From: Macrostomum lignano
Lineage: Eukaryota
Assembly (NCBI GenBank): GCA_002269645.1
Contig: NIVC01001608.1
Coordinates: forward strand, 62,001 to 126,000
Direction of reading: 5' to 3'
DNA: 64,000 nucleotides
The notes under the pieces were generated by a model. That model saw only the letters and a program-made list of their open reading frames with translations, had not been told where the DNA came from and searched no databases. Shown one piece after another: positions 1,805 to 47,053 of this stretch (positions are counted from its first letter, which is position 1; each line of letters begins with the position of its first letter). The position numbers and the translations under genes are program-made.

Positions 1805-2832
1805 CCACAGCTCCATCTAGACACCTAGCTCCATAGACAAAAAGGTGATCTAATATGCTAAGTAACCGCAATAGACTATGTGCCATTAGGAGTCAAAACT
1901 TTTTAGGGTGAGCACAGCCTCACATTACGAAATCTACAGTGCACGGTATTTCCAAGAGGAATTAGTGCGACTGACCAAATGAATGCCAGGGATTGCCTGA
2001 TGGGATAACCATCTACTGTGGTCTGTATTCAGAGGTTTTCCATCAGAGACTTCCTCTAAAAATCCCCATGGCAGTGGATATGAGCGTGTATTCCCTTTTC
2101 CGCTTTCCATGCCCACCTGATTTGGGAAAGATCTGGGAGTTGACCTGGAACAAGCTCTAATCTAGGTGAAATGTGCCAGGAAATCCACCTAGATCAGGTT
2201 TTCTTCTTCCGAATCAAGCTCCCAGAAAATTGTGATCTGGGTCAAATTTTGTTCATCTGGTCCTCAACCTGGAATTTTTACTGTTTCCAAGCCCAGATTA
2301 CTAATTTCTGGGTGAAGTTTCTGAATGAATTTTTTGACGGGTATTCTGAATTTGGATCTCACAGAAGAAATTGAGAAGGATAACCAACGGTAAAAATGCA
2401 AAAAATTGAAGAAAAAAACACAAGATTTAATACAGCTAAAATACTGCAAAACTATTCGATATGCTGAGCAAAACTTAAAAAACATTGTTAAACCATGATG
2501 ATTGACAGGCAAAGAGGCAAACAAAGTGGCGTTTGGCGAGCAATAGGCGGCAACAGCGCAAAGAAGCATAATGGGGGGGGGGTCAGCAAACAAACCCCAC
2601 AAGCTGCGAGCAATCTTATATTTTTGTTTTGTTTAAAAAAATTGAGTGCAAAGAGTGGCGAATGCGCAAATACTTTTGAATTAATTGAGAAAGAAACATT
2701 TCTATATGTGTTTTGTATTTTGCCTTCTTGCATGACCTGTTTGCTTCATCTGTTTAAACTATTAGTGCATTGATGAAGTCTAATTTGCCAGTCACTCCAA
2801 GAATCACAAACTTATCCGGTTCAATTTTTTGC

Positions 2833-5800
2833 ATGCCTCCTACTAAAGAAACAGACGAATTAAAAGCAGCAGACCGGGCCGATGGCAGGTCGGATACCGC
2901 TGTCGCCGCCGCCTCAGCCGACGCATTGAATGTAACTAGCCGATGCAGCTCCAGCGTCACCTCAGCTAAGCCGTTGCTATTGGATACAGGCGCGTTCGGC
3001 GCTTTGCTAGCCTGCGGCTTTGACGAAGAGATTCGAATCTACAAACTGTCCGATGCGAGGCGGGCACAGCGCGGCGGCCAGGAGCCCAACGCTACCGCCT
3101 CCGCTGCCGGGTTTCTATGGCGCTGGCCGCGCTGGCAACGGCTGGCCGGCGTTCACCGGGCCGCCGTGCGCGACATTCAAGCGTCGCCAAACAGCGAAGT
3201 GCAGCTAGTCAGCTGCGGCATGGACGGCAGACTGGCTGTGTGGAATTATCCTACTGGCCAGGCCGTGTCCGTGATTGAGCTGGGCTGCCCTATTCTGCGT
3301 GTGCTGCCGCTGCTGTCTGCCGACCTCTCCGATGCTGATAATGACGCTCCCGCTTACTATTGCCTGTTGCCTAGCAACCGTCAGGGCAAGCAGGAGTACC
3401 GAGTGACGGCACTCAACAGCCAGGCTTTGAAGCAGAACAAGCCCGGGATGAAATTGATGGGCCGAGTGCTGCCCGACTGTCTATCGCTTGGCCAGAACGG
3501 CCGGTTCCTCGTGTCCGCCAATCGTGGCAATCTGCTAGTTTATCGGCCGTCTCGCCAACGCGTGTACAGCCATTTCGCCTGCGACGGCGCCCGATGCCGG
3601 GTAGTGTCCGTGGCCGCCCATCCGAACCAACGTTCGGCCGCGGTCGGCCTGTCGAACGGTCGAATCTTGATTATGCACGGCCTGTTCACCTCCGGCCGGC
3701 CAGTGTCCACTCTGTTGCAGTGGCATTTTCGGCCAGTGTCCGGCCTGGCCTACGCGTCCGACGGTTGCGCCCTGTACAGCGGCGGGGAGGAGGCCGTCCT
3801 GGTGAAATGGGACACCAGCCCGGAGGCCGGCGAAGCGACCGGCAATCGAGCTTTCCTACCCCGCCTCGGCGCTAGAATTGTTGGCGCCGTCTGCGGACCG
3901 ACCGGCCAGGCGGCTGCGGCGGCGGTCTTATCGGACAACAGCGTGCTTGTGCTAGACTCCAATATGGGATTAGTCGGCGGGCTCAACGGCGGCGTGCAAG
4001 TCGGCGCCGACGTTGACGGAGCTCCTGACGAGCAGCAGCAGCAGCAGCAGCTCGGCCTGCTGCGCGACCCGCTAACCGAGTGCGTTGCCATGCCAGGCCA
4101 AGCTGGCGTAGTTCAATTCTACTCTGTGTCCGAGCAGCGCCACCTCGGCTGTCTGGACGTGGCTAAGGCCAATTATACTGCGGTAGAATCGGCTGTGGTT
4201 TCCAAGGTAACGCCGGCCAGAGTTGAAGCGGCCGCGTTCTCCGACGCCGGCGCTTGGTTAGCAACGTTCGACCGGCGGGATGACGGGCGATACCCGCCGG
4301 AGCTGCGGCTTCGGCTGTGGCTGCGGCAGTGCCACCGGCCGCTGGTCAAATCCGAGGTCGGGGACGTCAACGGCGAGACCGACGCTCTCTTTGAGCGGCT
4401 GGCATTCAGCCAGTGCAGCGAAGAGCGACTCGCTCATTGCATTGTCGGCATGGCGTTTCAACCGTGCGCAGGCGAGCGCAAGCTCGTTTGCTCGTTAAGC
4501 GACGGCAGCCTGGTGTGCTGGACTCGCCAGGAGCGAGTGCGGCATCTGGCCGAGCCTGGCCGACACACCGACTTCGCCTCGTTCTGGACGGTGCGTGGCA
4601 TCTCGGGATTGTGGGTCATGGAGTTTCAAAAGTCATGGTTAGTGGGACATGAACCTCCAATGGTCATAGTTAGTGAGTCATGGACCTTCGATGGTCATAG
4701 TGGGTCATTGACTCTTGATGGTCATAGTTGGTCATGGAGATCTGATAGTCGTAGTTTGTAGATTATAAAATTACGAGTATAATTGATATTGGCCGTGAAG
4801 TTTTTTATAATAGCAGATTGCTAGATCAACAAAACGTTTTTCGAAAGCATTGGGTTATTTTTTTAGCTCGTATAGGGTAATGAATTTATAATTGTGACTG
4901 ATAGTGCTATCTACTTGTAATGAGTTGTGGTTATTATGCTATCCTACTTAAATGCATTCCAGATAACTCGCACCTGGCGCCTGGGCCACAGTTTCACCGG
5001 CGGCCCATTAGCATTTGATCCTACCGGCCGCTACCTGCTCACCTGTCACCAATCGCAGGCCTGCGCAGCCGTTTGGAGCACCTGCAATCTCGCCAGACCG
5101 CCGGCTTTGTTCCGCCTGTTCGATGGCGCCGCACAGACGGCCGGCAGTCAGCTGCTGGCATTCTGCTCAATGTGGGACAGCGGCCAATCGGTTGTCGTCT
5201 GCGGCCGGGACAGGCTGAGAGTTTGGGACCAGCAGAGTGGTCGCCGGCTAGCCGAGGCTCGCCTGACAGTGACATCGGCGGCCGAGGATCACAAGTCCGG
5301 CATGCTGATTCTGCTGTGCGCCGCTGAACAGGCCCTGCTAATGCTGCACAGCTGCGAGCCTGGCCAGCTCAGCCGGATTCGACTCAACTGCCCCTCGGAG
5401 CCTGTCAATCTCTGCGTGACCGAGGACACGTTCGTGTTTATGACTCGCGATCGTCGACTGTTTGTATATCCCGAGCCTGCGGCGGCTGCCGTTGCGGCTT
5501 CGGTCGAAAACGAGGCGACAACGGCAGCGGCTGCGACTAAGGCGGAGCTGGAAGCCGAATCGGCCGCGGCGGCCTCGTTGCTAGGCAGGGTGTTCGGCCG
5601 GCGTCAGGCCGGCCTGCTAGGCGGCGCGCAGCTGGCCGATCCGGGCGCCGCTTTGGAGGCTCGCCTGCGCCTGTTCACCGAGTCGGACGCGTTCGCGGCG
5701 CCCAGTTTGGCGCGATTCGTAGCCGGCAATCTGGAGCTGGTGCGGCGCCGCCTGCTGGCTGAGGACGGCCTGACTGGGGAGGGAGAGGAGCAGGCGGAAC

Positions 5801-7627: not shown

Positions 7628-10600
7628 ATGAGAGTGCCAGCCGTGCAGCACAGTGGACAGCCAGTTGCTGGTCAGAGATCGGATGTTCAATGCATATTTT
7701 ATTGCATATTCCATCACGAGGCTGGGCCAAAAATCGAGGTGCAAGAGCCGGCGGATTTCATAGTGAAGGAAAGCTTTGACAAGGTCAGCCGCTATCTGAT
7801 TACTAAGACGGATTTTGACAATCGATTCATCTGGTTGGACGCGTTTGGATCCCGGATTATGGGCTGTGCTCAGTGCATCGAGGATAAGCGGTATAAACGG
7901 AACGCTATGCACTTTAACATCGGCCTGGTTATCAGTATGGACTGTCAGGTTGGAATCTGCACTATTGCTATGCCTTTTGTCTTTTGGTTTGAAAAGTTCT
8001 GTTTGGACCACTGATACTAGAATAACCAGATAATTAAATTTGTGAAAAAATCGGAGCATCTACTTTTTCAGTAGTTTATGCGCAGTGTCATTTCAAAATT
8101 AAATTTGGCAACTAAAATTTCCTTTCCTTCTTTGGAAGCATATGTGATTAATAAATGAACAACAGACATTTAACTCCATGTACACAAGTGAACGCAACAC
8201 GAACGAAACTCATCCTAAGGGGCAGGCCCAATCTAGCTCAGCCAATGAGAGAGCAGTAAAAAGAGAGATCAAAGTCAGACAGACGTAACTCAGCGTGGGG
8301 GCAGGCTTAATCTAGCTCAGCCAATGAGAGAGCAGTAAGGAGAGAGACCAAAGTCAGACGCAAGCAGGCAGGATGATTTTTCAACGAGCCAACGGTTACC
8401 CCTACAAATACAAAAAAAGTTAAATTAAGAGACCTCCTACTAACAAAAGTAACAAAAATAATTAAAATTGAATCTCTTGTGCGTGCACAAATGGTTTCTA
8501 ATACAAGAGAGGGCTCGGGGATCGGCAACTCCGCTATCTATCCGACCCTCTGGTCCATTGAAACTTCGTGGTAATAGCAATCCGTTAGGGTTTATGCCGA
8601 TTCTACTGTCAACTCTCCACTCACGACTTCACTCTTATCTACTTTCCTTTCTTGTCTTCCTTCTCATTTCTTCTCTGATCTGGGCCGCATCCTTGTGATG
8701 GATTCCTTATCTGGCCCGTTTATCGACCCCTGGTCTAGCTGAAGTTGCTACTATTAGCAGTATGTTAAACCCTTTTTGTTCACCCGTAGGTGCCAGTCAA
8801 ATACGAGCTGATTGTGAGAAAGCTTGGCCGCTACTTTCACAGCCTGGAGGTTGAGACCGCATTCCTATCCGACCCGGACGCCCAGACCAAACTGCTTCCT
8901 GTACTGACCAGCATTCGAGCCAGTCTTAACGGGCCCGGCTCCTGCAAGCTGCAGGTGTTGCCAGGCAGATCTTTGGAGCTCTTTCTGAAACCGGCCGCGC
9001 CTTTAGAGGCCGCCGCAATGCCGCAGGATTTTGAGGTTTGTTTATCTGCCTTGCTGATCGATTGCTACTTATTTAAATGCCATATTATTGTTTACCAACT
9101 ACTGGTCCCTGTGTGTCACTAATTATCTAGTACTGTTCTCTTAAATGTCAACTACTGTGACGAATTGATTGCACCAATGTCTGCTTCCTGAAGCTGTCAC
9201 CAGCATCTGACACTATCATCTGTCACCAGCATCTATCACCATCATCTGTCACCAGCATCTATCACCATCATCTGTCACCATCATCTGTCACCAGCATCTG
9301 TCACCATCATCTGTCACCAGCATCTGTCACCATAACAACAACAACAACAGAGTACGCTGCCAGATCACAAAAGCAGCGTCAGATGGCGCGCTTCAAAGCT
9401 TGGGCGCGAACAAAAGCCGCACCGCCGGCAGAGTCCGGGGCGCCGGCGTCAGCCAGCAGACAGTCGACGTAGCGCCGAGTCCTCGCCTGTCCCCGCCGGT
9501 AGGGTGCCTGCAACGTAAGTAGCAGCACCTCCTGCACCGGCTCCGGGCAGTAGGCCTCGGCGCGGATGACGTGGCCTGCCAGCTGGAGTCGCCGACGGCG
9601 CAGCAGATCGCTAGGACGGGCCAGGCCGGCGCGATGATAGAGCGCCGTGTTGGTGACTCGCTCGTTGCCGATCTTGAAGGCGGCGCGCAGCAGGCCAGCG
9701 TGCGCCGCGTCGACTTGAGCCTCGAGCGAGTCTGTCAGCGTCCAGTCTCGGCGTTGTATAACAGGACGGTCTCGATCACCGCCTGGAACAGCGCCGCCCT
9801 CTGGCGGTCCGGTAGGGCCTCGGACTGCAGGACTGACCTTATAGAACGAAAGGCAGCCCAAGCAAGTCCTCGGCGACGCCGCAGATCCTCGCGGACGTCG
9901 GGAACCAGACCGCCGAGGTAGACGAACTGCTGACATCTTGGAAGCTCACTCGCCTGTCCGTCAGCGCCTCGGCAGAAGATTGCAGCCTCGGTGTCGTCCG
10001 GCACGCATAGCACGACGGTCTTCTGCGTGTTGACCACCAGGCCGACGCTCGCCGCAACGGCAACCAGCCTATCCAGCTGTCGTTGGGCGCCCTCGACGGT
10101 CGAGGACAGCAGGGCGAGGTCATCGGCGTAGCCAAGCACGCTGAGCCGTCTCTCCGGTTGGCGTCGACCCACGCGTCGCCGCAGCAGGAAGCCGTCGTCG
10201 TTGGAAGGCAGAGCAGTCCGTAGCACCCAGTCAAGCACCAGAATAAACGGCGCTAGCGTATCTCCCTGGAGCACCCCGGAGGATGTCTCGAAGAAATCCG
10301 ATAGGCCGTCTGGTGTTGAGACAGCAGCCGTCGTGCCGTGGTACAGCGCCATGACAGCAGAAATCAGCAGCTCTGGCACGTTGTACGCACGGAGCACCTC
10401 TGGGAGCGCGTCCCTCACGACCGAGTCGAAAGCCTTCCTGAAATCGACGAAGATCAGGATCAGGGTCAACTGGCGGATGCGCGCCTCCTCGATGACTCGT
10501 CGAAGAGCCAGGATCTGCGTCACTGTGCCGCGATGGGGCCGGAATCCGTTCTGCTCAGGTCGCAGGTACGGGTCCAGCACAGGCTGTAACCGCGATAGCA

Positions 10601-13482
10601 GCATGCGGTTGAACAGCTTCGCGGCGCAGGACTCACCATCGTCGCCATCGACAGATCCCCGACAGATCCCGAGTCCCGACAGATCCCCGACAGATCACCA
10701 TCGACAGATGTCACCATCATCTGTCACCAGCATCTGTCATCAGCATCTGTCACCAGCATCTGTCACCAGCATCTGTCACCAGCATCTGTCACCATCATCT
10801 GTCACCATCATCTGTCACCAGCATCTATCACCATCATCTGTCACCATCATCTGTCACCAGCATCTGTCACCATCATCTGTCACCAGCATCTGTCATCAGC
10901 ATCTGTCACCATCATCTGTCACCAGCATCTGACACTATCATCTGTCACCATCATCTGTCAGTCACCATCATCTGTCACCAGCATCTGTCATCAGCATCTG
11001 TCACTATCATCTGTCACCAGCATCTATCACCATCATCTGTCACCATCATCTGTCACCAGCATCTGTCACCATCATCTGTCACCAGCATCTGTCACCATCA
11101 TCTGTCACCAGCATCTGTCATCAGCATCTGTCACCAGCATCTGTCACCAGCATCTGTCACCATCATCTGTCACCATCATCTGTCACCAGCATCTATCACC
11201 ATCATCTGTCACCATCATCTGTCACCAGCATCTGTCACCAGCATCTGTCACCAGCATCTGTCACCATCATCTGTCACCAGCATCTGTCATCAGCATCTGT
11301 CACCATCATCTGTCACCAGCATCTGACACTATCATCTGTCACCATCATCTGTCAGTCACCATCATCTGTCACCAGCATCTGTCATCAGCATCTGTCACTA
11401 TCATCTGTCAACAGCATCTGTCACCAGCATCTGTCACCAACATCTGTCACCATCATCTGTCACCAGCATCTGTCATCAGCATCTGTCACCAACATCTGTC
11501 ACCATCATCTGTCACCAGCATCTGTCATCAGCATCTGTCACTAGCATCTGTCACCAGCATCTGTCATCAGCATCTGTCACTATCATCTGTCAACAGCATC
11601 TGTCACCAGCATCTGTCACCAACATCTGTCACCAGCATCTGTCACCATCATCTGTCACCATCATCTGTCACCAGCATCTGTCACCAGCATCTGTCACCAT
11701 CATCTGTCATCATCATCTGTCACCATCATTTGTCACCATCATCTGTCACTAGCATCTGTCACCAACATCTGCCACCAGCATCTGTCACCATCATCTGTCA
11801 CCATCATCTGTCACCAGCATCTGTCACCATCATCTGTCACCAACATCTGCCACCAGCATCTGTCACCATCATCTGTCACCATCATCTGTCACCAGCATCT
11901 GTCACCAGCATCTGTCACCAGCATCTGTCACCATCATCTGTCACCAGCATCTGTCACCATCATCTGTCACCAGCATCTGTCATCAGCATCTGTCACCAGC
12001 ATCTGTCACCAGCATCTGTCACCATCATCTGTCACCATCATCTGTCACCAGATCTGTCATCTGTCACCATCATCTGTCAGTCACCATCATCTGTCACCAG
12101 CATCTGTCACCATCATCTGTCAGTCACCATCATCTGTCACAGCATCTGTCACCATCATCTGTCACCAGCATCTGTCACTATTATCTGTCACCATCATCTG
12201 TCACCAGCATCTGTCACCATCATCTGTCACCAGCATCTGTCACCAGCATCTGTCACTAGCATCTGTCACCAACATCTGCACCAGCATCTGTCACCATCAT
12301 CTGTCACCAGCATCTGTCACAGCATCTGTCACCATCATCTGTCACCAACATCTGCCACCAGCATCTGTCACCATCATCTGTCACCATCATCTGTCATCAT
12401 CATCTGTCACCAGCATCAAACATCAGCATCTGTCACCGATTCAATCCGGCAGGTGCCAGTTCTGGTTGGCCGGTCTCCGCCAGTCAAGACAGACATTGTC
12501 ACCAGCCTAATCCTGCCCTACATTGACGGAGTCTCGCACGTCGCTAAAATAGCCTGCATGGCCGACGTAGACAAGAGCATAGTGAAAACCTGCCTGCAGA
12601 ATCTCTGCAGCCTGCACGCTGTCAGATTCCTGCCGCTGACCCTGTACTCTGACTCTTACGCCTGTCTGACCGGACTGCATAGGCTCGTGTCCGATCCCAG
12701 ACTGGGCCAGCTCTGCCAGGAAGCTGTCACACTGTCTAACAAGGTGATGCTCGCAATTCATCTGCGCTCTACACCCGGGTATCTAGAGATCTCCAGCGAA
12801 TCATATCCCATCTCTATAGAATCCTATTTCATCTCTGTAGAATCCGTTTTCATCTCTATTGAATCTGATCCCATCTCTATAGAAACCGATCCCATCTCTA
12901 TAGAATAATATCCCATCTCTATAGAATCTGATCCATCTCTATAGAATCTGATCGCATCTCTATAGAATCCTATCCATCTCTATAGAATCCCATCTTATCT
13001 CTATAGAATCTGCCCCTATCTCTTGAGAATCTGTCCCCTATCTCTAGAGAATCGATAGGCACATGTCTAGAGGATGTCTACTCATCCTCAATCGCCCACC
13101 ACCCCGCTCCCGAACGCAGGAGCGAACGCCCAGCATCGGGCGGCTGTTCCGCTTATTCTCGTGCATGTCGCCGGGCTCCACTCTGAAAGACCTGCTGACC
13201 CTGCACAGCGGCCTGGCAGCGAATGTAGACGTGCTCAGATTAGTGCAGTTCGGCCTGCTGCACTGCCTAATCCGGCGGGTTAGCGCCTATCCGGTTCGGC
13301 TGCACTGGAGTCAAACCGGATCGGCTGACTGCTCTGTCGGGCTAAGAGGAACCGACCAGCTGAACCGGCTGCTAGACGGATACCGGTCTATGGATGAGAT
13401 CTGCGCCAGCACGGGACTGAGCCGGCAGATGGTTGAAGAACGACTAGAACGGGATTCACTTGTGGTGGTTATAAGACGTTGA
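7628..13482 (+). CDS. NPRL2: GATOR1 subunit NPRL2. Exons 7628-7948, 8790-9035, 12453-12743, 13120-13482, about 406 aa
   Basis: CIFYCIFHHEAGPKI, CIEDKRYKRNAMHFNIG, ILPYIDG, LVQFGLLHCLIRR and SMDEICASTG match NPRL2 motifs. All three introns are GT-AG and phase 0, and the frame is continuous. Confidence 0.93.
8218..8370. repeat. Two-copy direct repeat (about 89-bp spacing) in NPRL2 intron 1
   Basis: ggggcagg..aatctagctcagccaatgagagagcagtaa..agagaga.caaagtcagac occurs twice. Confidence 0.7.
9190..12440. repeat. 13-bp-type minisatellite (catctgtcaccag/catctgtcaccat), interrupted by an RTE element
   Basis: Tandem catctgtcac-ca(g/t) units at about 9190-9333 and about 10700-12440 in NPRL2 intron 2. 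Confidence 0.95.
9334..10632 (-). mobile_element. 5'-truncated RTE-clade non-LTR retrotransposon (RT domain plus C-terminus), frameshifted
   Basis: RT motifs QNGFRPHR, FVDFRKAFDS, GVLQGDTLAPF and YADDLALL in ORF 9735-10604. A 1-nt frameshift at YNAET/WTLT leads into ORF 9379-9936 (RRRRLQLAGHVIR). (TTG)n 3' tail at about 9334-9349. Possible 7-bp TSD tcaccat (9327-9333 and 10633-10639). Confidence 0.93.
12780..13055. repeat. atctctatagaatc-type minisatellite in NPRL2 intron 3
   Basis: Repeated cccatctctatagaatc units. Confidence 0.85.
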
Positions 13483-13644
13483 GTAGCTTTTATTGCATTG
13501 CTTGCCATTGATTTGATACATCTGCCAATAGCTGTTGGCGCAGTCAGGTTGTCTATGGTTAGAAGCATCAAGCTCGAAATGAGTAGCTATAGACTGTAAA
13601 TTCGATATGATGCAATCGTATATATTACTGACATAACTGCTGAG

Positions 13645-14085
13645 AGTAGCTGGCGCCTCGTCCCACTAATGACAAATATAGCCCTGATCGGTTAATTGGC
13701 TGGCGCCTCGAACTAATGTACAAATATAGCCCTGATCGGATCTAATTGGCTGGCGACACTAATGTACAAATATAGCCCTGATCGGATCTAATTGGCTGGC
13801 GCCTCCCCCATCCCCCACTAATGTACATATATAGCCCAAGTCTTCACTTTTAGCTTAACTGTCAATGCTTGTAGCCTTTAGGTGCCCGCTTGATTAACTG
13901 CTAATTCTATCCCAACAGTACAGCCTTGGTCATGCTCGTTTAGCCCAATCAGCCGCCTTCGCCCCCCCCACTAATGTACATTAGCCCTGATCGTACGCGG
14001 CAGCCTCCCCCGGCCCCACGTGCCTGATCGCTATGCGGCGCCTCCCCCATCCCTGGTGTACGGGTCACCTAGCTGGCGCCTGCCA
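13645..14085. repeat. Degenerate, indel-rich tandem repeat of about 45 bp
   Basis: cactaatgtacaaatatagccctgatcggatctaattggctggcg units, increasingly garbled towards 14085. Confidence 0.75.
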
Positions 14086-14086
14086 G

Positions 14087-14307
14087 GGTACAAGCCCTTA
14101 GCCTGGACTGTGCCTGATAAGCCGCAGGCTCTCTACCAGCTTTGCAATTGCAAGTACACGAAGAGCCCACCGCTGTGCGACGGCAGTCATACCAATCTGC
14201 CTTGCCAACTGATGGCTAAACAGGCCGATTGCAATGACAAATCTAATCACGCACAAGATTTAACATTGTGCAGCAGTTGCGGCTGGTGTCCAAAGTTTCA
14301 GTTCTGA
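14087..14307 (+). CDS. CISD3: Last exon of a CISD3/MiNT-like CDGSH iron-sulfur protein; upstream exon(s) not found in the window
   Basis: CNCKYTKSPPLCDGSH fits the CDGSH consensus C-x-C-x2-(S/T)-x3-P-x-CDG(S/T)H. It is followed by a Cys-rich tail (C..C..H..CSSCGW). Acceptor cctgccag at 14086 (phase 1) and stop TGA at 14305. Confidence 0.75.
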
Positions 14308-14359
14308 CGCGTAGCGGTGTAGCAGTATTTTTGTCTCTGATTTGCACAGAATAATGGAG

Positions 14360-16327
14360 TAGAGAGAGCAGAGAAAATAGAGGGGAGCAGAGAGAAGAGA
14401 AGGGAGCAGAGAGAAGAGAGGGGAGCAGAGAGAAGAGAGGGGAGCAGAGAGAAGATAAGGGAGCAGAGAGAAGAGAGGGGAGCAGAGAGAAGAGAGGGGA
14501 GCAGAGAGAAAAGAGGGGAGCAGAGAGAAAAGAGGGGAGCAGAGAGAAGAGAAGGGAGCAGAGAGAAGAGAGGGGAGCAGAGAGAAGAGAGGGGAGCAGA
14601 GAGAAGAGAAGGGAGCAGAGAGAAGAGAAGGGAGCAGAGAGAAGAGAGGGGAGCAGAGAGAAGAGAAGGGAGCAGAGAGAAGAGAGGGGAGCAGAGAGAA
14701 GAGAGGGGAGCAGAGAGAAGAGAAGGGAGCAGAGAGAAGAGAGGGGAGCAGAGAGAAGAGAGGGGAGCAGAGAGAAGAGAAGGGAGCAGAGAGAAGAGAA
14801 GGGAGCAGAGAGAAGAGAGGGGAGCAGAGAGAAGAGAAGGGAGCAGAGAGAAGAGAGGGGAGCAGAGAGAAGAGAGGGGAGCAGAGAGAAGAGAGGGGAG
14901 CAGAGAGAAGAGAAGGGAGCAGAGAGAAGAGAAGGGAGCAGAGAGAAGAGAAGGGAGCAGAGAGAAGTGAAGGGAGCAGAGAGAAGAGAAGGGAGCAGAG
15001 AAGAGAGGGTAGCAGAGAGAAGAGAGGGGAGCAGAGATAAGAGAAGGGAGCAGAGATAAGAGAAGGGAGCAGAGAGAAGAGAGGGGAGCAGAGAGAAGAG
15101 AAGGGAGCAGAGAGAAGAGAAGGGAGCAGAGAGAAGAGAGGGTAGCAGAGGAAAGAGAAGGGAGCAGAGGAAAGAGAGGGGAGCAGAGAGAAGAGAAGGG
15201 AGCAGAGAGAAGAGAGGGAGCAGAGGGAAGAGAGGGAGCAGAGAGAAGAGAAGGGAGCAGAGGGAAGAGAGGGGAGCAGAGAGAAGAGAAGGGAGCAGAG
15301 GGAAGAGAGGGAGCAGAGGAAAGAGAGGGGAGCAGAGAGAAGAGAAGGGAGCAGAGGAAAGAGAGGGGAGCAGAGAGAAGAGAAGGGAGCAGAGGTAAGA
15401 GAGGGAGGCAGAGGAAACAGAGGGGAGCAGAGAGAAGAGAAGGGAGCAGAGGGAAGAGAGGGAGCAGAGAGAAGACAGAGGAGCAGAGAGAAGAGAGGGG
15501 AGCAGAGGGAAGAGAGGGGAGCAGAGAGAAGAGAAGGGAGCAGAGGGAAGAGAGGGAGCAGAGAGAAGAGAAGGGAGCAGAGGGAAGAGAGGGGAGCAGA
15601 GAGAAGAGAAGGGAGCAGAGGAAAGAGAGGGGAGCAGAGAGAAGAGAAGGGAGCAGAGGTAAGAGAGGGAGGCAGAGGAAACAGAGGGGAGCAGAGAGAA
15701 GAGAGGGGAGCAGAGGAAAGAGAGGGGAGCAGAGAGAAGAGAAGGGAGCAGAGGCAAGAGAGGGGAGCAGAGGAAAGAGAGGGGAGCAGAGAGAAGAGAG
15801 GGAGCAGAGGGAAGAGAGGGAGCAGAGAGAAGAGAAGGGAGTAGAGGGAAGAGAGGGGAGCAGAGGAAAGAGAGGGGAGCAGAGAGAAGAGAAGGGAGCA
15901 GAGAGAAGAGAAGGGAGCAGAGGGAAGAGAGGGAGCAGAGGAAAGAGAGGGGAGCAGAGAGAAGAGAAGGGAGCAGAGGGAAGAGGGAGCAGAGATTAGA
16001 GAAGGGAGCAGAGGGAAGAGAGGGAGCAGAGGAAAGAGGGGAGCAGAGAGAAGAGAAGGGAGCAGAGGTAAGAGAGGGAGGCAGAGGAAACAGAGGGGAG
16101 CAGAGAGAAGAGAAGGGAGCAGAGGGAAGAGAGGGAGCAGAGAGAAGAGAGGGGAGCAGAGGAAAGAGAGGGGAGCAGAGGAAAGAGAGGGGAGCAGAGG
16201 AAAGAGAGGGAGCAGAGGGAAGAGCGGGAGCAGAGAGAAGAGAAGGGAGTAGAGGGAAGAGAGGGGAGCAGAGGAAAGAGAGGGGAGCAGAGAGAAGAGA
16301 AGGGAGCAGAGGCAATAGAGGGGAGCA
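14360..16327. repeat. Purine-rich minisatellite of about 19 bp (agagagaagagaggggagc)n, about 2 kb
   Basis: Direct inspection; it produces the spurious LLSAPFSSLC ORFs. Confidence 0.95.
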
Positions 16328-16716
16328 GATGGTTCTGAAAGCCTGTGAAGCCCCTGATCATAATCCCATTTAGCAATAACTCGAACCAGATCCAGATGTC
16401 CTAATCCAGAAAAGAGCAATTCAAATTTAATGCTGATTCAAATTCAGTACCTTTGCTATAATGAAACGATTTTATGAGGTTTGTTTTCATTAATAATTCA
16501 ATAAAATATGGTGCCTTTACACAGCTTTGATTTACAATTGCTTATATCGAATTCAGACTTTAACTAAGCCTCTTAATAATTTCTGATAGTTTGTTAGCGA
16601 TTTATAACCTGGAACTTGATTTATGAGTAAGGCTAAAGTGTTAGTTACATGACTCATCAATGCGAGTATATTTTAGTAACATTAGTGCACGTGCACTATG
16701 ACACACCTGTCCATAG

Positions 16717-18267
16717 GCTACCGGATTAAGCGGCGGCATTGTCCGCCTGTCTCGCCGATCAGTTAACGCAGGCCAAAGCGTTTCCCGCGTGGCAATTCGT
16801 CTGCTATCGTCTGGCAGTCAGCAGCAACAACAACAGCAGGAGCAACAGCAGCAGTCTCGGCCGCCGCTTCATCGCGACCCAGAGCTCGCCCAGCTTCTTG
16901 GCCGAATTGCCAGCCTGGATTTGGCCAAGCTGACGCCGGAGACTCGGGCCCTGCTAGATCGGATCGTTCGAGTTGATCATGCTGGTGATTTAAACAGTTC
17001 GCTGCTTGTGTGTATTTGTGCAACTTTATCGATTCCTATAATGGTCGCAATCTGCAGTTCACAGTTATATCCCGCCATTTATCATTGCATTTATAACTAT
17101 TGACATGATTAATTGAAATTAGGTAAATTCGTCCCTACATATAGTTTCGATAAATCAACCTCTGACTTAGATAAATCCGCCCCTGGTTTAGATAAATCCG
17201 ACCCTGGTTTAGATAAATCCGCCCCTGGTTTAAATAAACCTGCCCCTAGTTTAGATAAATCCGCCCCTGGTTTATATAAACCTGCCCCTAGTTTAGATAA
17301 ATCCGCCCCTGGTTTATATAAACCTGCCCCTAGTTTAGATAAATCCGCCCCTGGTTTAGATAAACCTGCCTCTGGTTTAGATAAATCCACCCCTGGTTTA
17401 AATAAACCTGCCCCTAGTTTAGATAAATCCACCCCTGGTTAAAATAAACCTGCCCCTAGTTTAGATAAATCCGACCCTGGTTTAGATAAATCCGCCCCTG
17501 GTTTAAATAAACCTGCCCCTAGTTTAGATAAATCCGACCCTGGTTTAGATAAATCCGCCCCTGGTTTAAATCCGCCCATAGTTTAAATAAACTAGCCCCA
17601 ATTCCCTGTAAATCCGCCCCTAGTTTAAATAAATCTGCCCCTAGTTTGCATCAATCCGCCCCTGCTGTACATGTTCTCAGTTAAATCTCCCTCTAGTTCG
17701 AACAGATCCACCTGCACCCCAGAGAAACCCGCTACCGGTTCCGATAGATCTGCTCCTATTTCAGTTAAATCCGCCTCAACTTCCGCAGGCGAATTCGGCG
17801 CCGACCGGATCTACGCCGGCCAGCTAGCTGTGCTGGGCGGCACCCCAACAGGCCCGCTGATCCGCCACATGCACGAGCAGGAGCAGGACCATCTGGCCGC
17901 GTTCGAAGCCCTCATCCCGGCGTTGCGCGCCCGACCCACCGTGCTGATGCCGTTCTGGCGTGTGGCCGGCTTCGCTTTGGGCGCCGGCACCGCTTTAATT
18001 GGCAAAGAGGCCGCCATGGCCTGCACTGTGGCTGTTGAAGCCGAGATTCAGGAACACTACAATGCTCAGCTGCGCAGCCTGCTAGCCGATAATCCCGAGC
18101 TACACGCCGACTTAATGCGGGTCATCGCTCGATTCCGCGACGAGGAGGCCGAGCATCACGACACTGGACTACGCGAGGACGCTGAGTCTGCGCCCGCTTA
18201 TCCGGCTTTGTCCGCCGCCATTCGAGCTGGCTGTCGGGTTGCCATCTTCTTGTCGGAGCGGATCTGA
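16717..18267 (+). CDS. COQ7: Ubiquinone biosynthesis di-iron hydroxylase COQ7/CLK-1. Exons 16717-16984 and 17789-18267
   Basis: RIVRVDHAG|EFGADRIYAGQ, EQEQDHL, MACTVAVE, EHYNAQLR, FRDEEAEHHD and GCRVAIFLSERI. Phase-1 GT-AG intron. The Arg/Ser-rich N-terminus looks like a mitochondrial presequence. No in-frame ATG follows the acceptor at 16716. Confidence 0.93.
17140..17665. repeat. 21-bp minisatellite (ttagataaatccgcccctggt)n in the COQ7 intron
   Basis: Direct inspection; gives a 7-aa periodic ORF. Confidence 0.92.
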
Positions 18268-18319
18268 ACTAATTCACAATCAATAAATTCGCAAAAGATA
18301 TTGGTAAATAGCCTTAGAA

Positions 18320-18500
18320 CGATAAAATGCCATAGAAATGCCGGGGAAATTCCATGGAAATGCCAGGGACATTCCATGGAAATGCGGCGAAAATTCCATT
18401 GAAATGCCGAGGGAATTCCAGAAATTCCAAAAATATCCGCGGAAATTCCATGGAAATTTCATGAAATGTCCGCAGAAATTCCAAGAAAAATGATTTTTTA
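18320..18500. repeat. Imperfect repeat built on ttccatggaaat downstream of COQ7
   Basis: Recurring semi-palindromic aattccatggaaat motif. Confidence 0.6.
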
Positions 18501-19039
18501 TAAACCCCACAGACATGCCATTAAAAATCACACGTTTCGTTTACCCAGTTACATGTTGTAGAGAAAGAGTTGTAGTCCAGTGGGTTCGGAGTCAAACGGT
18601 CTAAAGTTGCTCCTTGAATATTTGAATCCTTGAATATTTGGCTATATTTTGTTAACTTACAAGTAGGTATTCCTGTGTAAGCAAATGACCCACAATAATG
18701 AAACCTTTGCTTAGCTTAGACTTAGTTCAAACCGGAAAGTCACCCAGTGCTTTTTATTTGAATTTCTATCTGACTGTTAACCATCTGCTTTTCTTCGAAG
18801 CATTTTGAACAGTTTTGAAATTGTACTTCATTTTCAATAGCTTTGTTATCAGGCTTGTCATAGCCTGAGGCTTAAATATACAAATATTAATCTGCAAAGG
18901 AGTTGTTTATTAAATCGTATTTTTCATTTTCAATTTTGTATCAACAAGAAATAATCTGTCAACATCTAGAATGACGCTCAAACTCCCTCTAGAATCTCAT
19001 TCAATCGCCTTAATAGAGAATAGCCCTCAATGTCCTTTG

Positions 19040-19535
19040 ATAATCGCCCTCGATCTCCTTTGATAATCGCCCTCAATCTCCATTGATAATCGCCCTCAAT
19101 CTCCATTGATAATCGCCCTCAATCTCCATTGATAATCGCCCTCAATCTCCACTGATAATCGCCCTCAATCTCCATTGATAATCGCCCTCAATCTCCATTG
19201 ATAATCGCCCTCAATCTCCATTGATAATCGCCCTCAATCTCCACTGATAATCGCCCTCAATCTCCATTGATAATCGCCCTCAATCTCCACTGATAATCGC
19301 CCTCAATCTCCATTGATAATCGCCCTCAATCTCCATTGATAATCGCCCTCAATCTCCATTGATAATCGCCCTCAATCTCCATTGATAATCGCCCTCAATC
19401 TCCATTGATAATCGCCCTCAATCTTCATTGATAATCGCCCTCAATCTCCATTGATAATCGCCCTCAATCTCCATTGATAATCGCCCTCAATCTCCATTGA
19501 TTAATCGCCCTGAATCTCCATTGATAATCGCCCTG
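19040..19535. repeat. 23-bp minisatellite (ttgataatcgccctcaatctcca)n
   Basis: About 21 near-identical copies ending just before the THADA 5' region. Confidence 0.95.
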
Positions 19536-19591
19536 GATCTCCTTTGAAACAGCAAAACATGGGTAAATATTCCAGCAGTTTCAGCAGTTGA

Positions 19592-21534
19592 ATGCGGTGC
19601 ACCAGACAGATCAGCAGCGGCTGTGTGGCCGAACTTGTCAGCGGTCTGGCTAACTCGGACATCAGTCGCAAAGAGAAGCACATTCTTGTTGGGTACGCAA
19701 TAAAAATCTAACAGTTATATAAAATGTCAAGTTTCTATCCCCGCTTGCTAGCTAATGCGATGATCATTGCAGACGGTTAAAACAATTCCCAGCAGTTGAG
19801 GTTCAGTCGCACTGCCAACAGTTGCTATGCAGCAATGCGAGCTTAGAGACGCTCGTGTCCGCGTTCGAGTACCTGTTGCAAGGAAATTTCGGTCAGTACT
19901 ATTAATTAGTATTGCTTATATGGCTAGCCCATCCTGTGCTTGGTCACAATGGAAAATTAGCATACTGATCACAATGACAGATATGGAGATATGGAGACGC
20001 TAAGAAAGGCTTGAACTTTGATTTCCCAGCAACTCTCCGTTAATACTCACTTGTCATCATCTCGGCATCGGGTGTGGAGCCCTTTGGAGTGGGGGCGGAG
20101 CAGCTACGCGGTAAACGACTCTGACTCTCGCGCCACGACTCTCCCTAGTTCGATTCCGTGCTCGGCCCACCCCCATTCACACAAATGAATGCCAACCCCC
20201 AAGGCACAGAGAGTGTACATGCCTGACGATTAGAAAGTCAGAGCTGCTGTACATCCTGTGTGAGCGTGTGTGTGAGTGTGTGCTTGTCTGCGTACGTACA
20301 GTACAAGGGCGTTTGAGGGGCCACGGCCATCATGTAATTATTTTTTTACTTTACAGTATAATAATAAATAATGATAATAATTGACTACACCTGCCCTAAT
20401 GGGCCAGATGTGCAACCGACAGCTCAGCCGCAGCTATTGCTCAATTACCCCAGCTAAATGCTGGCACCCATTTTTACAGCTGGGTGAACTGAAGCAATGC
20501 AGAGTTAAGTGTCTTGCTCAAAGACACAACTAGTTCCAGTGGGATCGGGAATCGAACCCCCGACCTTCAAGTTGTGAGTCTGCAACTGCAACCCCATGTA
20601 AACAGTATATAAGTATTTGTGGAGTCTTAGCATTCTTCCATGGGTTGTACTAACTGGAGACAGCCCGTATCCATTACCATCGACACTTGAATATCGTTGT
20701 TTTTAGGCTTGCCCGATACCTTCTGTCACAAACTGCTGGATAAAACTGTAATAGACATTTCTGATAGGTAAGTTCATAAAAATCTTATTTTGTGTATATT
20801 AAAGCTTGTAAAAGGGTAGAAAATGGTTAATAGGGAATAAATAAGGGAATAATAGGGAAGAAGGGGGAGCAGAGGGAAGAAAGGGGATCAAAGGGAAGAA
20901 AGGGAATCAGAAGGAAGAAAAGGGAAGAAAGTGGATCAAAGGGAAGAAAGGGGATCAGAAAGAAGAAGGGGGATCAAAGGGAAGAAAGGGGATCAAAGGG
21001 AAGAAGGGGGATCAAAGGGAAGAAAGGGGAATCAAAGGAAAGAAAGGGAATCAGAAGGAATAAATGGGATCAGAGGGAAGAACGGAGGGGATTAGAAGGA
21101 AGAAAGCTTGCCAAAGGCATAAGGAGGAAAATATATCTGGTCAAAGAACAAAGGCACAAAGCTTCCCAAAATGCTCTTCCATTCGCCAGCCCCATCGGCA
21201 GCGCCCGACTGCTCAGAAGCTGCCAGACGGCGCTGAAACTGCTTCGCAGCCTCGGACTTGAGGCGGTGCCCGCCGAAGTAGCGGAGAAGCTCCGGTCAGT
21301 TCTGATTGAACGATTGGTTGGTGAGTTTTGCTTACATAAACATACAGTTTCGATACTCGCTACTTTTACATTAGGGTGCGCAGCTTTATTCACTAAGGAA
21401 GAAAATCTCCACTTCTATACTCGTAATTTGTGCAGATCTGCAGCAGTCTGGCGGATCCGACTGCCTGTGCCTTGCGTACCTGCTGCTCGTGGCTTTGTGC
21501 AGATCAGACCTGCCCAGCCTCACGGTAATTAGCC

Positions 21535-21623
<89 letters not shown>

Positions 21624-24600
21624 GTCTGTCTGTGTCAGCATTGCTTCGCCTCATCCCAATCCCAGCTGCAGTCGCTCACAGGCCAGCCGACAGACCGGGC
21701 AGCAGCCAGCAGCCAACTGGCATTTTGGAACGCCCTCCTCACCCAGGACGCCTACCTGAGTCGTCGCGGTTCCGTCACCCCGAATGATGACGAGGTCCGC
21801 GACAGCAGCTGCTCCATTGACGTTCCCCGTCTTCTCGACTGTCTGCAGTATGCCCTGCAGTTAAATAGGTAGCTTGGCAGTTCAGAATACATGTACATTT
21901 GCCACTGGTCTAAGAACATCGCTGTGTATGCTAATAAAGTCTGCATTGTTTTGCTGTGCTTTCAGCGTTGCTGCCGATCCGCTACTGTTGTCGAAAACGA
22001 TTCTATTATGCTATGAGGCCTTGCTGGCAAGGTGAGTATGTTTCAGCCTAATATACAGTAGACCGCATGCTGTAGTCTAATATAGACCGGATACTGTAGT
22101 CTAATATAGACCGGATGCTGTAGGCTAATATAGACCGGATGCTGTAGTCTAATATAGACCTAATATAGACCGGATGCTGTAGCCCAATATACAGTAGACC
22201 GGATGCTGTAGTCTAATATAGACCGGATGCTGTAGTCTAATATAGACCGGATACTGTAGTCTAATATAGACCGGATACTGTAGGCTAATATAGACCGGAT
22301 ACTGTAGTCTAATATAGACCGGATGCTGTAGTCTAATATAGACCGGATGCTGTAGTATAATATAGACCGGATACTGTAGGCTAATATAGACTGGATGCTG
22401 TAGTATAATATAGACCGGATACTGTAGGCTAATATAGACCGGATGCTGTAGGCTAATATAGACCGGATGCTGTAGTCTAATATAGACCTAATATAGACCG
22501 GATGCTGTAGCCCAATATACAGTAGACCGGATGCTGTAGTCTAATATAGACCGGATGCTGTAGTCTAATATAGACCGGATACTGTAGTCTAATATAGACC
22601 GGATACTGTAGGCTAATATAGACCGGATGCTGTAGTCTAATATAGACCGGATGCTGTAGTCTAATATAGACCGGATACTGTAGGCTAATATAGACCGGAT
22701 GCTGTAGGCTAATATAGACCGGATGCTGTAGGCTAATATAGACCGGATGCTGTAGGCTAATATAGACCGGATGCTGTAGTCTAATATAGACCGGATGCTG
22801 TAGTCTAATATAGACCGGATGCTGTAGGCTAATATAGACCGGATGCTGTAGTCTAATATAGACCGGATGTTGCAGCATGATGGGATGTTTTGTCATAAAG
22901 AATTCATTTTTACCTAAGCAAAACCTTGAATTAAATTGTCAAGATGTCAATCAACTGACGGGGAGTCTTACGACAGTCGCTTGGCCCAGCCGCAGCTGAC
23001 ACAATTGACTCTGGACTATGTGATGGCTAACATGGAATCTCATATCTTTGTGAGGACTACTGTACTGACTAACTTGCCTTGCGTGTCTATTTTGCAGCTA
23101 ACAACACAGATAAAATCGATGTAAACAGTTTATTATTTATTTCAGCTGGTCAAGCACAACTGTTCGGCTATATTCAACTGTCTCGTGCGACTAATTGGTA
23201 CGTGAGATGCTATTTCTTATGTGCAGCTCTGTCACATAAAATTATAAACCTGTCCGACCCACTGCTAAGGTGTCAGGCGGGTTGTGTCAGCTCTGATAAG
23301 CATCTCCTATTCGGCTCCGTACTAACCTCAGTCAATGCTGCTTAACTTGTAGGTCTTATCCGACTGGAGATACTGATTTTTATTAAAATTACTTCTAAGA
23401 CTTGCACTATATAGTAGTAATATAAAAATACTACTTTAAAAAGTATTGATTGTTAAGCTTTTCGTTCTTTTTTATTAGAGTCAGGGGCTGTGTGCACCCT
23501 GGTGAACTTTAAGCGATATTTTCACACAACCGGCAAGAGGCATTGCTGCCGACTCTCCTGAGCAGGCACACAAGCGCGCGGATACGTACGCAGTTAGACG
23601 CGAAGGCACACACTCACACAGGAGTGTACAGCGGCCTTAACTTTATTTATCGTTAGGCATGTACACTTCACTGCGCCTTGGGGGTTGGCTCTCAAGGCCG
23701 TTAATTGCACGAGCAGAGTCAAGCCGAGATTCCAATTTAGTCCCAAATTAATGTGACTGCACTTGGAATCGAGCCTGGGCCGCTGGCACATCAGAGCGCC
23801 GCACTAGACCACAAGGCTATGGTCCTTCTGATTTAAAAGTACTTTTTTATCCGAAGCGTACTACATGTACTTATGAATATAATTATTTGGCTGCTAAAAT
23901 CACTATAAAGATCGCATCAGCGGCTGCTGGGACGCAGTGCTCCGCCGAGTTCACTCTCTCAGCTGGGAGGCCAAGGCCAAATACGCACTGCTACAGGGTC
24001 TGGCGGCTGCGCAGCCCAGACTGGTGCTGACCGCCTGTCCCAATGTGCTCAGGGTTGCCGTGCGACAGAGCCGGGAGCACGTGCTTGGCTACTATGTGAG
24101 CTGCCTTGACTGAGAATCTCCCATCAACTCCCATCGACAATCTCCCATCAACTCCCATTGATAATCTCCCATCAACTCCCATTGAGAATCTCCCATCAAC
24201 TCGATCCCATTGATAATCTCCCATCAACTTCCATTGAGAATCTCCCATCAACTCCCATTGAGAATCTCCCATCAACTCCCACTGATAATCTCCCATCAAC
24301 TTCCATTGAGAATCTCCCATCAACTCCCATTGATAATCTCCCATCAACTTCCATTGATAATCTCCCATCAACTCCCACTGATAATCTCCCATCAACTTCT
24401 ACTGATAATCTCCCATCAACTCCTACTGATAATCTCCCATCAACTCCTACTGATAATCTCCCATCAACTCCCATTGACAATCTCCCATAAACCCCATTGA
24501 CAATCTCCCATAAACCCCATTGACAATTTCCCATAATTACCATAAACCCCATTGACAATCTCCCATAAACCCCATTGACAATCTCCCATAAACCCCATAG

Positions 24601-47020: not shown

Positions 47021-47053
<33 letters not shown>

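What the first reader, a model, noticed from the sequence alone, without database searches (positions are those of the whole stretch)
16700..16990. COQ7 has no genomic start codon: candidate initiation on the AUG at the end of the flatworm spliced leader
Seen: the COQ7 frame is open back to 16717 and is blocked by an in-frame TAG (16714-16716) that is also a good 3' splice acceptor (cctgtccatAG). The exon starts in phase 0 (GCT ACC GGA...) and the first in-frame Met lies deep inside the di-iron domain. Adding one Met gives MATGLSGGIVRLSRRSVNAGQSVSRVAIRLLSSGS, an Arg/Ser-rich, acid-free mitochondrial presequence as COQ7 requires. Known: flatworm spliced leaders end in AUG, and that AUG can act as the initiator. 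Inference: this CDS is completed only by trans-splicing, so ab initio annotation would truncate it and lose the targeting peptide. The nearby strong donor ATGA|GTAAGG (about 16623) is phase 1 and out of frame.
Basis: partly seen in the sequence, partly recalled or inferred. Interest (0 to 1): 0.8.

Follow-up and report, generated by a model that had tools for sequence, protein, structure and literature searches.

The report
Flatworm COQ7 gene lacking its own ATG
The COQ7 (ubiquinone synthesis) gene of the flatworm Macrostomum lignano has no start codon in the genome and most likely takes it from the AUG ending the trans-spliced leader, a mechanism known in flatworms since 2006, so this is a useful annotation fix rather than a discovery.

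Summary
The window is Macrostomum lignano scaffold NIVC01001608.1. COQ7 has two exons, 16717-16984 and 17789-18267. Its frame is closed by TAG 16714-16716, whose AG is a 3' splice acceptor, and exon 1 starts in phase 0. The first in-frame genomic ATG (17869) lies inside the di-iron domain, after the first iron ligand.

- The M. lignano spliced leader ends in ATG.
- The RNA-seq-based GenBank annotation found no start codon in any of four gene copies (all marked 'partial').
- GenBank names COQ7 as gene 2 of a multi-gene transcriptional unit.
- GC content jumps from about 0.35 to 0.60 exactly at 16717.
- 16717 is the only phase-0 acceptor between the in-frame TAG and the annotated CDS start at 16738.
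- No credible upstream exon carries an ATG with a phase-0 donor.
- Adding one Met gives an N-terminus that looks like a mitochondrial presequence.
- In sister scaffolds the upstream CISD gene has the same ATG-less, phase-0 start at a consensus trans-splice acceptor.

I could not reach any read or cDNA joining the leader to 16717. The GenBank CDS starts 21 nt downstream of the acceptor, for unknown reasons.

Initiation on the leader AUG is established in flatworms (Cheng et al. 2006) and has been noted for Macrostomum. This is a new member of a known kind, of modest interest.

The parts
16697..16716 (+). 3' splice (trans-splice) acceptor region ctatgacacacctgtccatAG. Its last three bases, TAG 16714-16716, are the in-frame stop that closes the COQ7 frame upstream.
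   Evidence: Identical in all four genomic copies. GC content jumps from 0.37 to 0.59 at 16717.
16717..16984 (+). COQ7 exon 1. It starts in phase 0 (GCT ACC GGA...), has no in-frame ATG, and ends in phase 1 at donor CTG|GTGATT.
   Evidence: 100% identical to GenBank PAA65892.1 from 16738 onward.
16717..16818 (+). Codons for residues 2-35 (ATGLSGGIVRLSRRSVNAGQSVSRVAIRLLSSGS), the putative mitochondrial presequence once a Met is added.
   Evidence: In the first 35 residues (leader Met included) there are 5 Arg and no Asp or Glu. The first acidic residue is at position 43. The amphipathic moment is 0.68, reached by 18 of 2000 shuffles. An R-3 cleavage motif RLL|SS lies at residues 29-31.
16819..16854 (+). 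CAG/CAA repeat encoding QQQQQQQEQQQQ, a linker between the presequence and the catalytic domain that is absent from the 11 other animal COQ7 proteins aligned.
16985..17788 (+). Intron 1 (GTGATT...CCGCAG), which contains a 21/42-nt tandem repeat at 17142-17664.
17789..18267 (+). COQ7 exon 2, including the TGA stop at 18265-18267.
17869..17871 (+). First in-frame genomic ATG (M118). Starting here would delete helix 1 and iron ligand E92.
18282..18287 (+). AATAAA polyadenylation signal, 14 nt after the stop codon.
16623..16632 (+). Decoy ATGA|GTAAGG: an ATG followed by a strong donor, but in phase 1, so out of frame with 16717.
14366..16329 (+). 19-nt purine-rich satellite (104 copies) filling most of the CISD-COQ7 spacer (presumed outron or intercistronic region).
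   Evidence: The spacer is 2409 nt, or 445 nt once the repeat is subtracted.
14083..14307 (+). Truncated CISD (zf-CDGSH) gene upstream. Its intact paralogue is GenBank gene Mlig014096g1, in the same transcriptional unit as COQ7 (g2).

Best explanation
The COQ7 pre-mRNA of Macrostomum lignano is SL trans-spliced at the AG ending at 16716. It is probably made as part of a polycistronic unit with the upstream CISD gene. The 35-nt spliced leader (...TTATTGCATG) is joined to GCTACCGG..., so its 3'-terminal AUG becomes the first AUG of the mRNA, in frame with the ORF. Translation from that AUG gives a 249-aa protein: an Arg/Ser-rich, acid-free N-terminal mitochondrial presequence, a poly-Gln linker, and a complete di-iron COQ7 domain.

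Shown: the gene structure, the absence of a genomic start codon, the phase, the species, and the leader sequence (from the literature).
Inferred: that the leader is joined at 16717, and that ribosomes start on its AUG.
For: 1. Species and leader. The window is 100% identical to M. lignano NIVC01001608.1. The M. lignano SL is CGGTCTCTTACTGCGAAGACTCAATTTATTGCATG, and 30-39% of genes are trans-spliced, with enrichment among conserved genes (PMC8629364 and PMC5730564).
2. No genomic start. TAG 16714-16716 is in frame, there is no in-frame ATG before 17869 (M118), and iron ligand E92 lies upstream of it.
3. Public annotation. It was built from RNA-seq, SL-read peaks and poly(A) reads. It leaves the CDS 5'-partial in all four copies and names it Mlig014096g2, with CISD as Mlig014096g1. 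That marks COQ7 as the second gene cut out of one transcriptional unit.
4. Position of the 5' end. The annotated CDS reaches up to 16738, so the mRNA 5' end is at or before that point. Of the two AGs between the in-frame TAG and 16738, only the one ending at 16716 (exon start 16717) is in phase 0.
5. Composition. GC content steps from 0.30-0.37 to 0.59-0.62 exactly at 16717.
6. No alternative exon. The best ATG-plus-phase-0-donor candidates within 3.1 kb upstream score 4.7, 2.9 and -1.6, against 6.65 for the real donor, and none has GT[G/A]AG. Each of the 8 ATGs in the 316 nt upstream opens only 9-26 codons on an unspliced RNA.
7. N-terminus. The Met-extended N-terminus has presequence features at the very end of the protein. 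All 11 aligned animal orthologues carry N-terminal extensions before the domain.
8. Neighbouring gene. In the sister scaffolds the CISD CDS starts exactly at cttcAG|GCC, which matches the TTNCAG trans-splice consensus. It is phase 0 and ATG-less.
9. Spacing. Repeat-adjusted spacers of 445 and 636 nt meet the <1 kb operon criterion of PMC8629364.
10. Mechanism. Initiation on the flatworm SL AUG has been demonstrated experimentally (Cheng et al. 2006, as cited in PMC9851317, PMC3510090 and PMC12582326).
Against: - I could not obtain any read, cDNA or protein showing the leader joined at 16717.
- The acceptor CCATAG does not match the [T/C]TNCAG motif, which is found at 44% of M. lignano trans-splice sites.
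- The GenBank CDS starts at 16738, 21 nt downstream of the proposed junction, at no recognisable signal. So the annotation does not itself place the 5' end at 16717.
- The four copies are too similar for conservation to discriminate between signals.
- The presequence call rests on simple features, not on a trained predictor.
Confidence: 0.8

Rival explanations
1. A small upstream exon ending in, or just after, an ATG is cis-spliced to 16717 and supplies the Met. Candidates are ATG|GTGCCT at 16508-16510, ATG|GTTCTG at 16329-16331, and ATGAAACGATTTTATGAG|GTTTGT at 16461-16478.
For: These sites exist and are phase 0. They are conserved in all four copies, but so is almost everything else. The two bare ATG|GT sites would give exactly the same protein as the leader AUG.
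Against: Their donor scores are 2.9, -1.6 and 4.7, against 6.65 for the gene's real donor. None has the GT[G/A]AG found at 65% of M. lignano donors. They lie in 30-37% GC sequence with no coding character. The RNA-seq-guided annotation found no such exon in any copy and left the CDS partial.
Confidence: 0.07
2. The mRNA, trans-spliced or not, is translated from a non-AUG codon in exon 1 (for example ATT 16738 or CTG 16747) or from the internal AUG at 17869.
For: The GenBank CDS happens to begin at ATT 16738. Near-cognate initiation exists in eukaryotes (PMC9851317).
Against: Starting at 17869 removes ligand E92 and helix 1, so the product could not be an active COQ7. On an unspliced RNA, several upstream AUGs with short ORFs precede the frame. 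If the leader is attached at 16717, its AUG is first and in frame, so scanning ribosomes would meet it before any near-cognate codon. GenBank marks the CDS 'partial', not as ATT-initiated.
Confidence: 0.05
3. This copy is not a working gene. It would be a decaying paralogue of a neopolyploid genome, and the missing ATG would reflect degeneration.
For: M. lignano carries many duplicated scaffolds. Two of the four copies have 1-nt deletions that break the frame (L004 in exon 1, L003 near the C-terminus). The CISD gene next to this copy is truncated.
Against: The window copy and L002 encode identical, uninterrupted proteins with all six iron ligands invariant. The only coding difference between them in exon 2 is synonymous (17934, CGA/CGG). 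The ATG-less start is identical in all four copies, including the intact ones. Both frameshifts fall in CCC runs, which is typical of long-read assembly errors.
Confidence: 0.05

Closest known systems
[quoted passage not shown]
   Same: The SL ends in AUG. The first coding exon starts in phase 0 directly at the trans-splice acceptor. No genomic AUG can give the conserved N-terminus. [quoted passage not shown] In E. granulosus several mitochondrial proteins are among those with an in-frame SL AUG.
   Different: The species is a free-living macrostomorph, not a neodermatan parasite or a planarian. The SL junction for this gene is inferred here, not observed. COQ7 was not named as such a case in any paper I could read.
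M. lignano SL trans-splicing and operons (Wudarski et al. 2017, PMC5730564; Ustyantsev and Berezikov 2021, PMC8629364)
   Same: The genes form a same-strand cluster, NPRL2-CISD-COQ7-THADA. Repeat-adjusted spacers are under 1 kb. COQ7 is annotated as gene 2 of a transcriptional unit. COQ7 is a conserved gene, the class enriched among trans-spliced genes.
   Different: In what I could read of those papers, neither mentions use of the SL AUG as a start codon (no hit for 'start codon' in that sense or for 'initiat'). The acceptor here is TAG rather than the enriched TTNCAG.
COQ7 / CLK-1 / Cat5 5-demethoxyubiquinone hydroxylase (Pfam PF03232)
   Same: The full-length domain is present at 51-64% identity to other animal COQ7 proteins. 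The ligands E92, E122, H125, E174, E210 and H213 are invariant. There is an N-terminal extension before the domain.
   Different: The pre-domain region is longer (79 aa) and has a poly-Gln insert. The start codon is not encoded in the gene.
Macrostomum cliftonense and M. hystrix annotation practice (Wiberg et al. 2023, PMC10468722)
   Same: [quoted passage not shown]
   Different: This is a general remark. No individual genes that depend on the SL AUG were analysed.

Membership tests
SL-AUG-initiated trans-spliced mRNA (flatworm slORF) | The organism has an SL RNA whose exon ends in AUG. | tested here: met
   The window is M. lignano NIVC01001608.1. The published SL ends ...TTGCATG (PMC8629364). 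The SL gene itself is not in the window.
SL-AUG-initiated trans-spliced mRNA (flatworm slORF) | A 3' splice acceptor lies at the 5' end of the first coding exon. | tested here: met
   ccatAG|GCT at 16715-16717, with a GC step at 16717. It does not match the most enriched TTNCAG motif, which is present at only 44% of sites.
SL-AUG-initiated trans-spliced mRNA (flatworm slORF) | The exon begins in phase 0, so the SL AUG is in frame with the main ORF. | tested here: met
   Of the two AGs between the in-frame TAG and the annotated CDS start (16738), only the one giving exon start 16717 is in phase 0.
SL-AUG-initiated trans-spliced mRNA (flatworm slORF) | No genomic in-frame AUG can produce the conserved full-length protein. 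| tested here: met
   There is an in-frame TAG at 16714. The first in-frame ATG is 17869, inside the domain. No credible upstream ATG exon exists. GenBank marks the CDS 5'-partial in four copies.
SL-AUG-initiated trans-spliced mRNA (flatworm slORF) | SL-containing reads or cDNA are joined at that acceptor. | not testable with these tools
   No RNA reads were available. The only indirect support is that the gene is 'g2' of a transcriptional unit cut by the TBONE pipeline.
SL-AUG-initiated trans-spliced mRNA (flatworm slORF) | Translation actually starts at the SL AUG. | not testable with these tools
   This needs ribosome profiling, N-terminal proteomics or reporter assays.
COQ7 / CLK-1 di-iron hydroxylase (PF03232) | A full-length match to the family profile above the curated threshold. 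| tested here: met
   224.5 bits against a cut-off of 23.5, covering profile positions 2-169 of 169.
COQ7 / CLK-1 di-iron hydroxylase (PF03232) | The six carboxylate and histidine iron ligands (E, ExxH, E, ExxH) are present. | tested here: met
   E92, E122, H125, E174, E210 and H213 are invariant columns in a 12-sequence alignment.
COQ7 / CLK-1 di-iron hydroxylase (PF03232) | An N-terminal mitochondrial targeting sequence is present. | tested here: inconclusive
   Heuristic features fit: 5 Arg, no acidic residues, an amphipathic moment reached by 18 of 2000 shuffles, and an R-3 motif. No trained predictor or import assay was available.
M. lignano operon (Ustyantsev and Berezikov 2021 criterion) | Same-strand neighbours with a repeat-adjusted intergenic distance under 1 kb, and a trans-spliced downstream gene. 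| tested here: inconclusive
   The distance criterion is met: 445 nt for CISD-COQ7 and 636 nt for COQ7-THADA after subtracting tandem repeats, measured CDS to CDS. The genes share a transcriptional-unit name. Trans-splicing of the downstream gene was not observed directly.

The most novel reading that the evidence does not exclude
Obligate dependence on the leader AUG is common in Macrostomum, not a curiosity. Two consecutive genes of one transcriptional unit, a CISD3-like iron-sulfur protein gene and COQ7, both lack genomic start codons and begin in phase 0 at trans-splice acceptors. If this holds genome-wide, it would place SL-AUG initiation at the base of rhabditophoran flatworms. It would also mean that many of the '5'-partial' proteins in the M. 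lignano GenBank annotation are in fact complete once one Met is added.
Probability: 0.5. Interest if true: 0.4.

Novelty: new member of a known kind. Interest (0 to 1): 0.27.

Why it matters
- Annotation. The public COQ7 entries of M. lignano (PAA65892.1, PAA80474.1; UniProt A0A1I8JPP7) are partial or mis-fused. Adding the leader-encoded Met gives a complete 249-aa precursor with its targeting peptide.
- Method. In flatworm genomes, a conserved ORF that opens in phase 0 at an AG and has no ATG should be completed with the SL AUG rather than truncated. slORFfinder (PMC9851317) was built for this class.
- Biology. For such genes, trans-splicing is required to create the ORF at all, not just to cap the mRNA. 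The mechanism itself has been known since 2006, so this case does not open a new question.

Tried and rejected
- Direct transcript evidence. Exact look-ups of M+COQ7, COQ7 without Met, five SL read-through variants of COQ7, and three equivalent variants for CISD found nothing among 15 billion proteins. Supplements of PMC5730564 and PMC5816591 hold no entry for Mlig014096, Mlig004773, Mlig006855 or COQ7. PMC8629364 has no supplements held. Cheng et al. 2006 is not held.
- SL RNA gene in the window: none within 3 mismatches. Rfam finds only a tRNA.
- Conservation among the four copies, to tell functional from non-functional upstream signals: the copies are about 99% identical in the 420 nt upstream, so the comparison is uninformative.
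- UniProt A0A1I8JPP7 starts exactly at ATGLSGG. I rejected this as proof, because stop-to-stop ORF calling would give the same start, the TAG stop and the AG acceptor being the same bases.
- Alternative acceptors. AG|C at 16731 is phase 2 and leads into a stop. The CAG codons of the poly-Gln tract (16822 onward) are phase 0 but lie downstream of the annotated CDS start and would delete the presequence.
- A TATA-like TATATTTTA at 16667 as a promoter for an unspliced mRNA: such an RNA would carry only short upstream ORFs and no productive AUG.

Full report
**Identity of the window.** The predicted protein is 100% identical to GenBank 'hypothetical protein BOX15_Mlig014096g2, partial [Macrostomum lignano]'. 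Window 10738-24000 is 100% identical to scaffold NIVC01001608.1 of assembly GCA_002269645.1 (Mlig_3_7). Window position 1 corresponds to record position 62001.

**The observation.**
- Frame-1 translation of 16600-17010 reads ...HTCP*ATGLSGGIVRLSRRSVNAGQSVSRVAIRLLSSGSQQQQQQQEQQQQSRPP...RVDHAG. TAG 16714-16716 is in frame, and its AG forms the acceptor ccatAG|GCT.
- Exon 1 is 16717-16984, with donor CTG|GTGATT in phase 1. The intron is 16985-17788 and is full of a 21/42-nt tandem repeat. Exon 2 is 17789-18267 and ends in TGA. AATAAA follows at 18282.
- The spliced ORF matches Pfam COQ7 end to end (E=8e-67, residues 80-246).
- In an alignment with 11 animal orthologues, the six iron ligands (E92, E122, H125, E174, E210, H213; numbering includes the added Met) are invariant.
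- The only ATG in exon 1 (16979) is out of frame. The first in-frame ATG is 17869 (M118), downstream of ligand E92.
- The gene therefore has no genomic start codon able to give an active enzyme.

**Where the start codon could come from.**
- (a) An upstream cis exon. I listed every ATG in 13600-16716 whose open frame reaches a GT in phase 0. There are 13 such pairs. The best is ATG16461...GAG|GTTTGT (score 4.7). The gene's real donor scores 6.65. None has the GT[G/A]AG seen at 65% of M. lignano donors. All lie in 30-37% GC sequence. The strong donor ATGA|GTAAGG at 16623 is phase 1 and reads into a stop.
- (b) An unspliced mRNA. Each of the 8 ATGs in the 316 nt upstream opens only 9-26 codons.
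- (c) The spliced leader. The M. lignano SL is CGGTCTCTTACTGCGAAGACTCAATTTATTGCATG (PMC8629364). Joined at 16717, its terminal AUG is the first AUG of the mRNA and is in frame.

**Indirect evidence that 16717 is an SL acceptor.**
- Annotation method. The Mlig_3_7 annotation was built from RNA-seq. Transcriptional units were cut into genes by the TBONE pipeline, using peaks of SL-containing reads and poly(A) reads, and ORFs were then called by TransDecoder (PMC5730564).
- Annotation result. COQ7 is 5'-partial in all four genomic copies (PAA65892.1, PAA80474.1, PAA80468.1, PAA46263.1). It is named Mlig014096g2, and the upstream CISD gene is Mlig014096g1. Two genes were thus cut out of one transcriptional unit.
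- Position of the 5' end. The annotated CDS begins at 16738, so RNA evidence reaches at least that far. Two AGs lie between the in-frame TAG and 16738, and only the one giving exon start 16717 is in phase 0.
- Composition. GC content steps from 0.30-0.37 to 0.59-0.62 exactly there.
- Spacing. After subtracting tandem repeats, the spacers are 445 nt (CISD-COQ7) and 636 nt (COQ7-THADA), below the 1 kb used to define M. lignano operons.
- Gene class. Trans-spliced genes make up 30-39% of M. lignano genes, and conserved genes are enriched among them.

**A parallel case next door.** In the three sister scaffolds (L002-L004) the CISD CDS starts exactly at ctTCAG|GCC, a match to the [T/C]TNCAG trans-splice motif. 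It is in phase 0. The 22 open codons upstream hold no in-frame ATG, and there is none inside the CDS until near the C-terminus. That gene also seems to need the leader AUG (MADNSKEPP...). NPRL2, further upstream, has its own ATG. The THADA ATG sits 7 nt after a tttcAG.

**The N-terminus.**
- With one Met added, residues 1-35 contain 5 Arg, 9 Ser/Thr and no acidic residue. The first Asp or Glu is at position 43.
- The best 18-residue amphipathic moment is 0.68, reached by 18 of 2000 shuffles.
- An R-3 processing motif (RLL|SS) lies at residues 29-31.
- All 11 aligned orthologues have N-terminal extensions before the conserved LDRIIRVDHAGE.
- Because a presequence must be N-terminal, the protein probably starts at 16717 or within a few residues of it. 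These are heuristics, not a trained predictor.

**What is missing or unexplained.**
- I could not obtain a read or cDNA with the leader joined to 16717.
- The GenBank CDS begins 21 nt downstream of the acceptor, at no recognisable signal, whereas the CISD CDS begins exactly at its acceptor. I cannot explain this.
- UniProt A0A1I8JPP7, from the older assembly, starts exactly at ATGLSGG. Stop-to-stop ORF calling would give the same start, so this proves nothing.
- The acceptor is CCATAG, not TTNCAG, although that motif is present at only 44% of sites.
- The four copies are too alike for conservation tests.
- Two copies carry 1-nt deletions in CCC runs. These may be assembly errors.

**Comparison with what is known.**
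- Use of the flatworm SL 3'-terminal AUG as initiator methionine was shown by Cheng et al. (J Biol Chem 2006). [quoted passage not shown]
- In E. granulosus, 143 of 187 SL-bearing clusters are full length when the SL ATG is used, and SL-AUG use is conserved among Neodermata (PMC3510090).
- All reported flatworm SLs end in ATG (PMC12582326).
- A dedicated tool, slORFfinder, exists for this class.
- For Macrostomum, Wiberg et al. [quoted passage not shown]
- In the M. lignano trans-splicing papers I could read, I found no discussion of SL-AUG use.

**Verdict.** This COQ7 is a new, well-formed example in a macrostomorph of a known mechanism. Its value lies in correcting the annotation. Interest is modest (0.27).

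Noticed in passing
L002:4248-4646, L003:4398-4796, L004:4216-4614 (paralogous scaffolds); window remnant 14083-14307: The CISD3-like zf-CDGSH gene upstream of COQ7 also lacks a genomic ATG. Its GenBank CDS (Mlig014096g1, 'partial') starts in phase 0 exactly at the consensus trans-splice acceptor ctTCAG|GCC, making it a second SL-AUG candidate (MADNSKEPP...). In the window copy only 74 of 132 residues remain, and the 5' part with the acceptor is replaced by other sequence (window 13654-14047).
   Followed up: partly
window 16738 (GenBank CDS start) against 16717 (acceptor): The GenBank COQ7 CDS starts 21 nt downstream of the acceptor at ATT, with no splice or start signal there. The same offset appears in three copies. 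The cause is unknown; it may be a 5'-incomplete transcript model or a leader-trimming artefact.
   Followed up: partly
window 14366-16329: A purine-rich 19-nt satellite (GAGCAGAGAGAAGAGAGGG, about 104 copies, 89% matches) fills the CISD-COQ7 spacer. It gives the strongest GC and AT skew in the window.
   Followed up: partly
window 17142-17664, 18325-18483, 19019-19547: Further tandem repeats lie in the COQ7 intron (21/42/63-nt units) and in the COQ7-THADA spacer (11/22-nt units and a 23-nt unit in 23 copies). This fits the reported repeat inflation of M. lignano intercistronic regions.
   Followed up: no
L003 (window-equivalent 18193) and L004 (window-equivalent 16878): Two of the four COQ7 copies have single-base deletions in CCC runs that shift the frame. 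This explains the odd GenBank proteins PAA80468.1 (altered C-terminus) and PAA46263.1 (181 aa). They are either long-read assembly errors or decaying paralogues.
   Followed up: partly
window 19578-19594: The THADA/DUF2428 gene's ATG (19592) lies 7 nt after tttcAG, which matches TTNCAG. If the leader is joined there, its AUG is out of frame with the main ORF and would open a reading frame that runs across the main ATG.
   Followed up: no
window 43051-44337 (+): An intronless 428-aa ORF with an ATG start matches rhodopsin-family 7TM receptors (E about 1e-12). It lies on the same strand, apparently inside the long THADA gene, whose C-terminal TPR_Trm732_C match is at 45640-47124.
   Followed up: no
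window 9735-10604 (-), 2770-4761 (+), 55031-55102 (+), 61213-62286 (+): Other features seen: a reverse-transcriptase ORF on the minus strand within the NPRL2 region, where GenBank lists no NPRL2 gene for this copy within the 10 kb upstream of COQ7 that was retrieved; a WDR75-like WD40 ORF; one tRNA gene; and a WSC-domain ORF.
   Followed up: no
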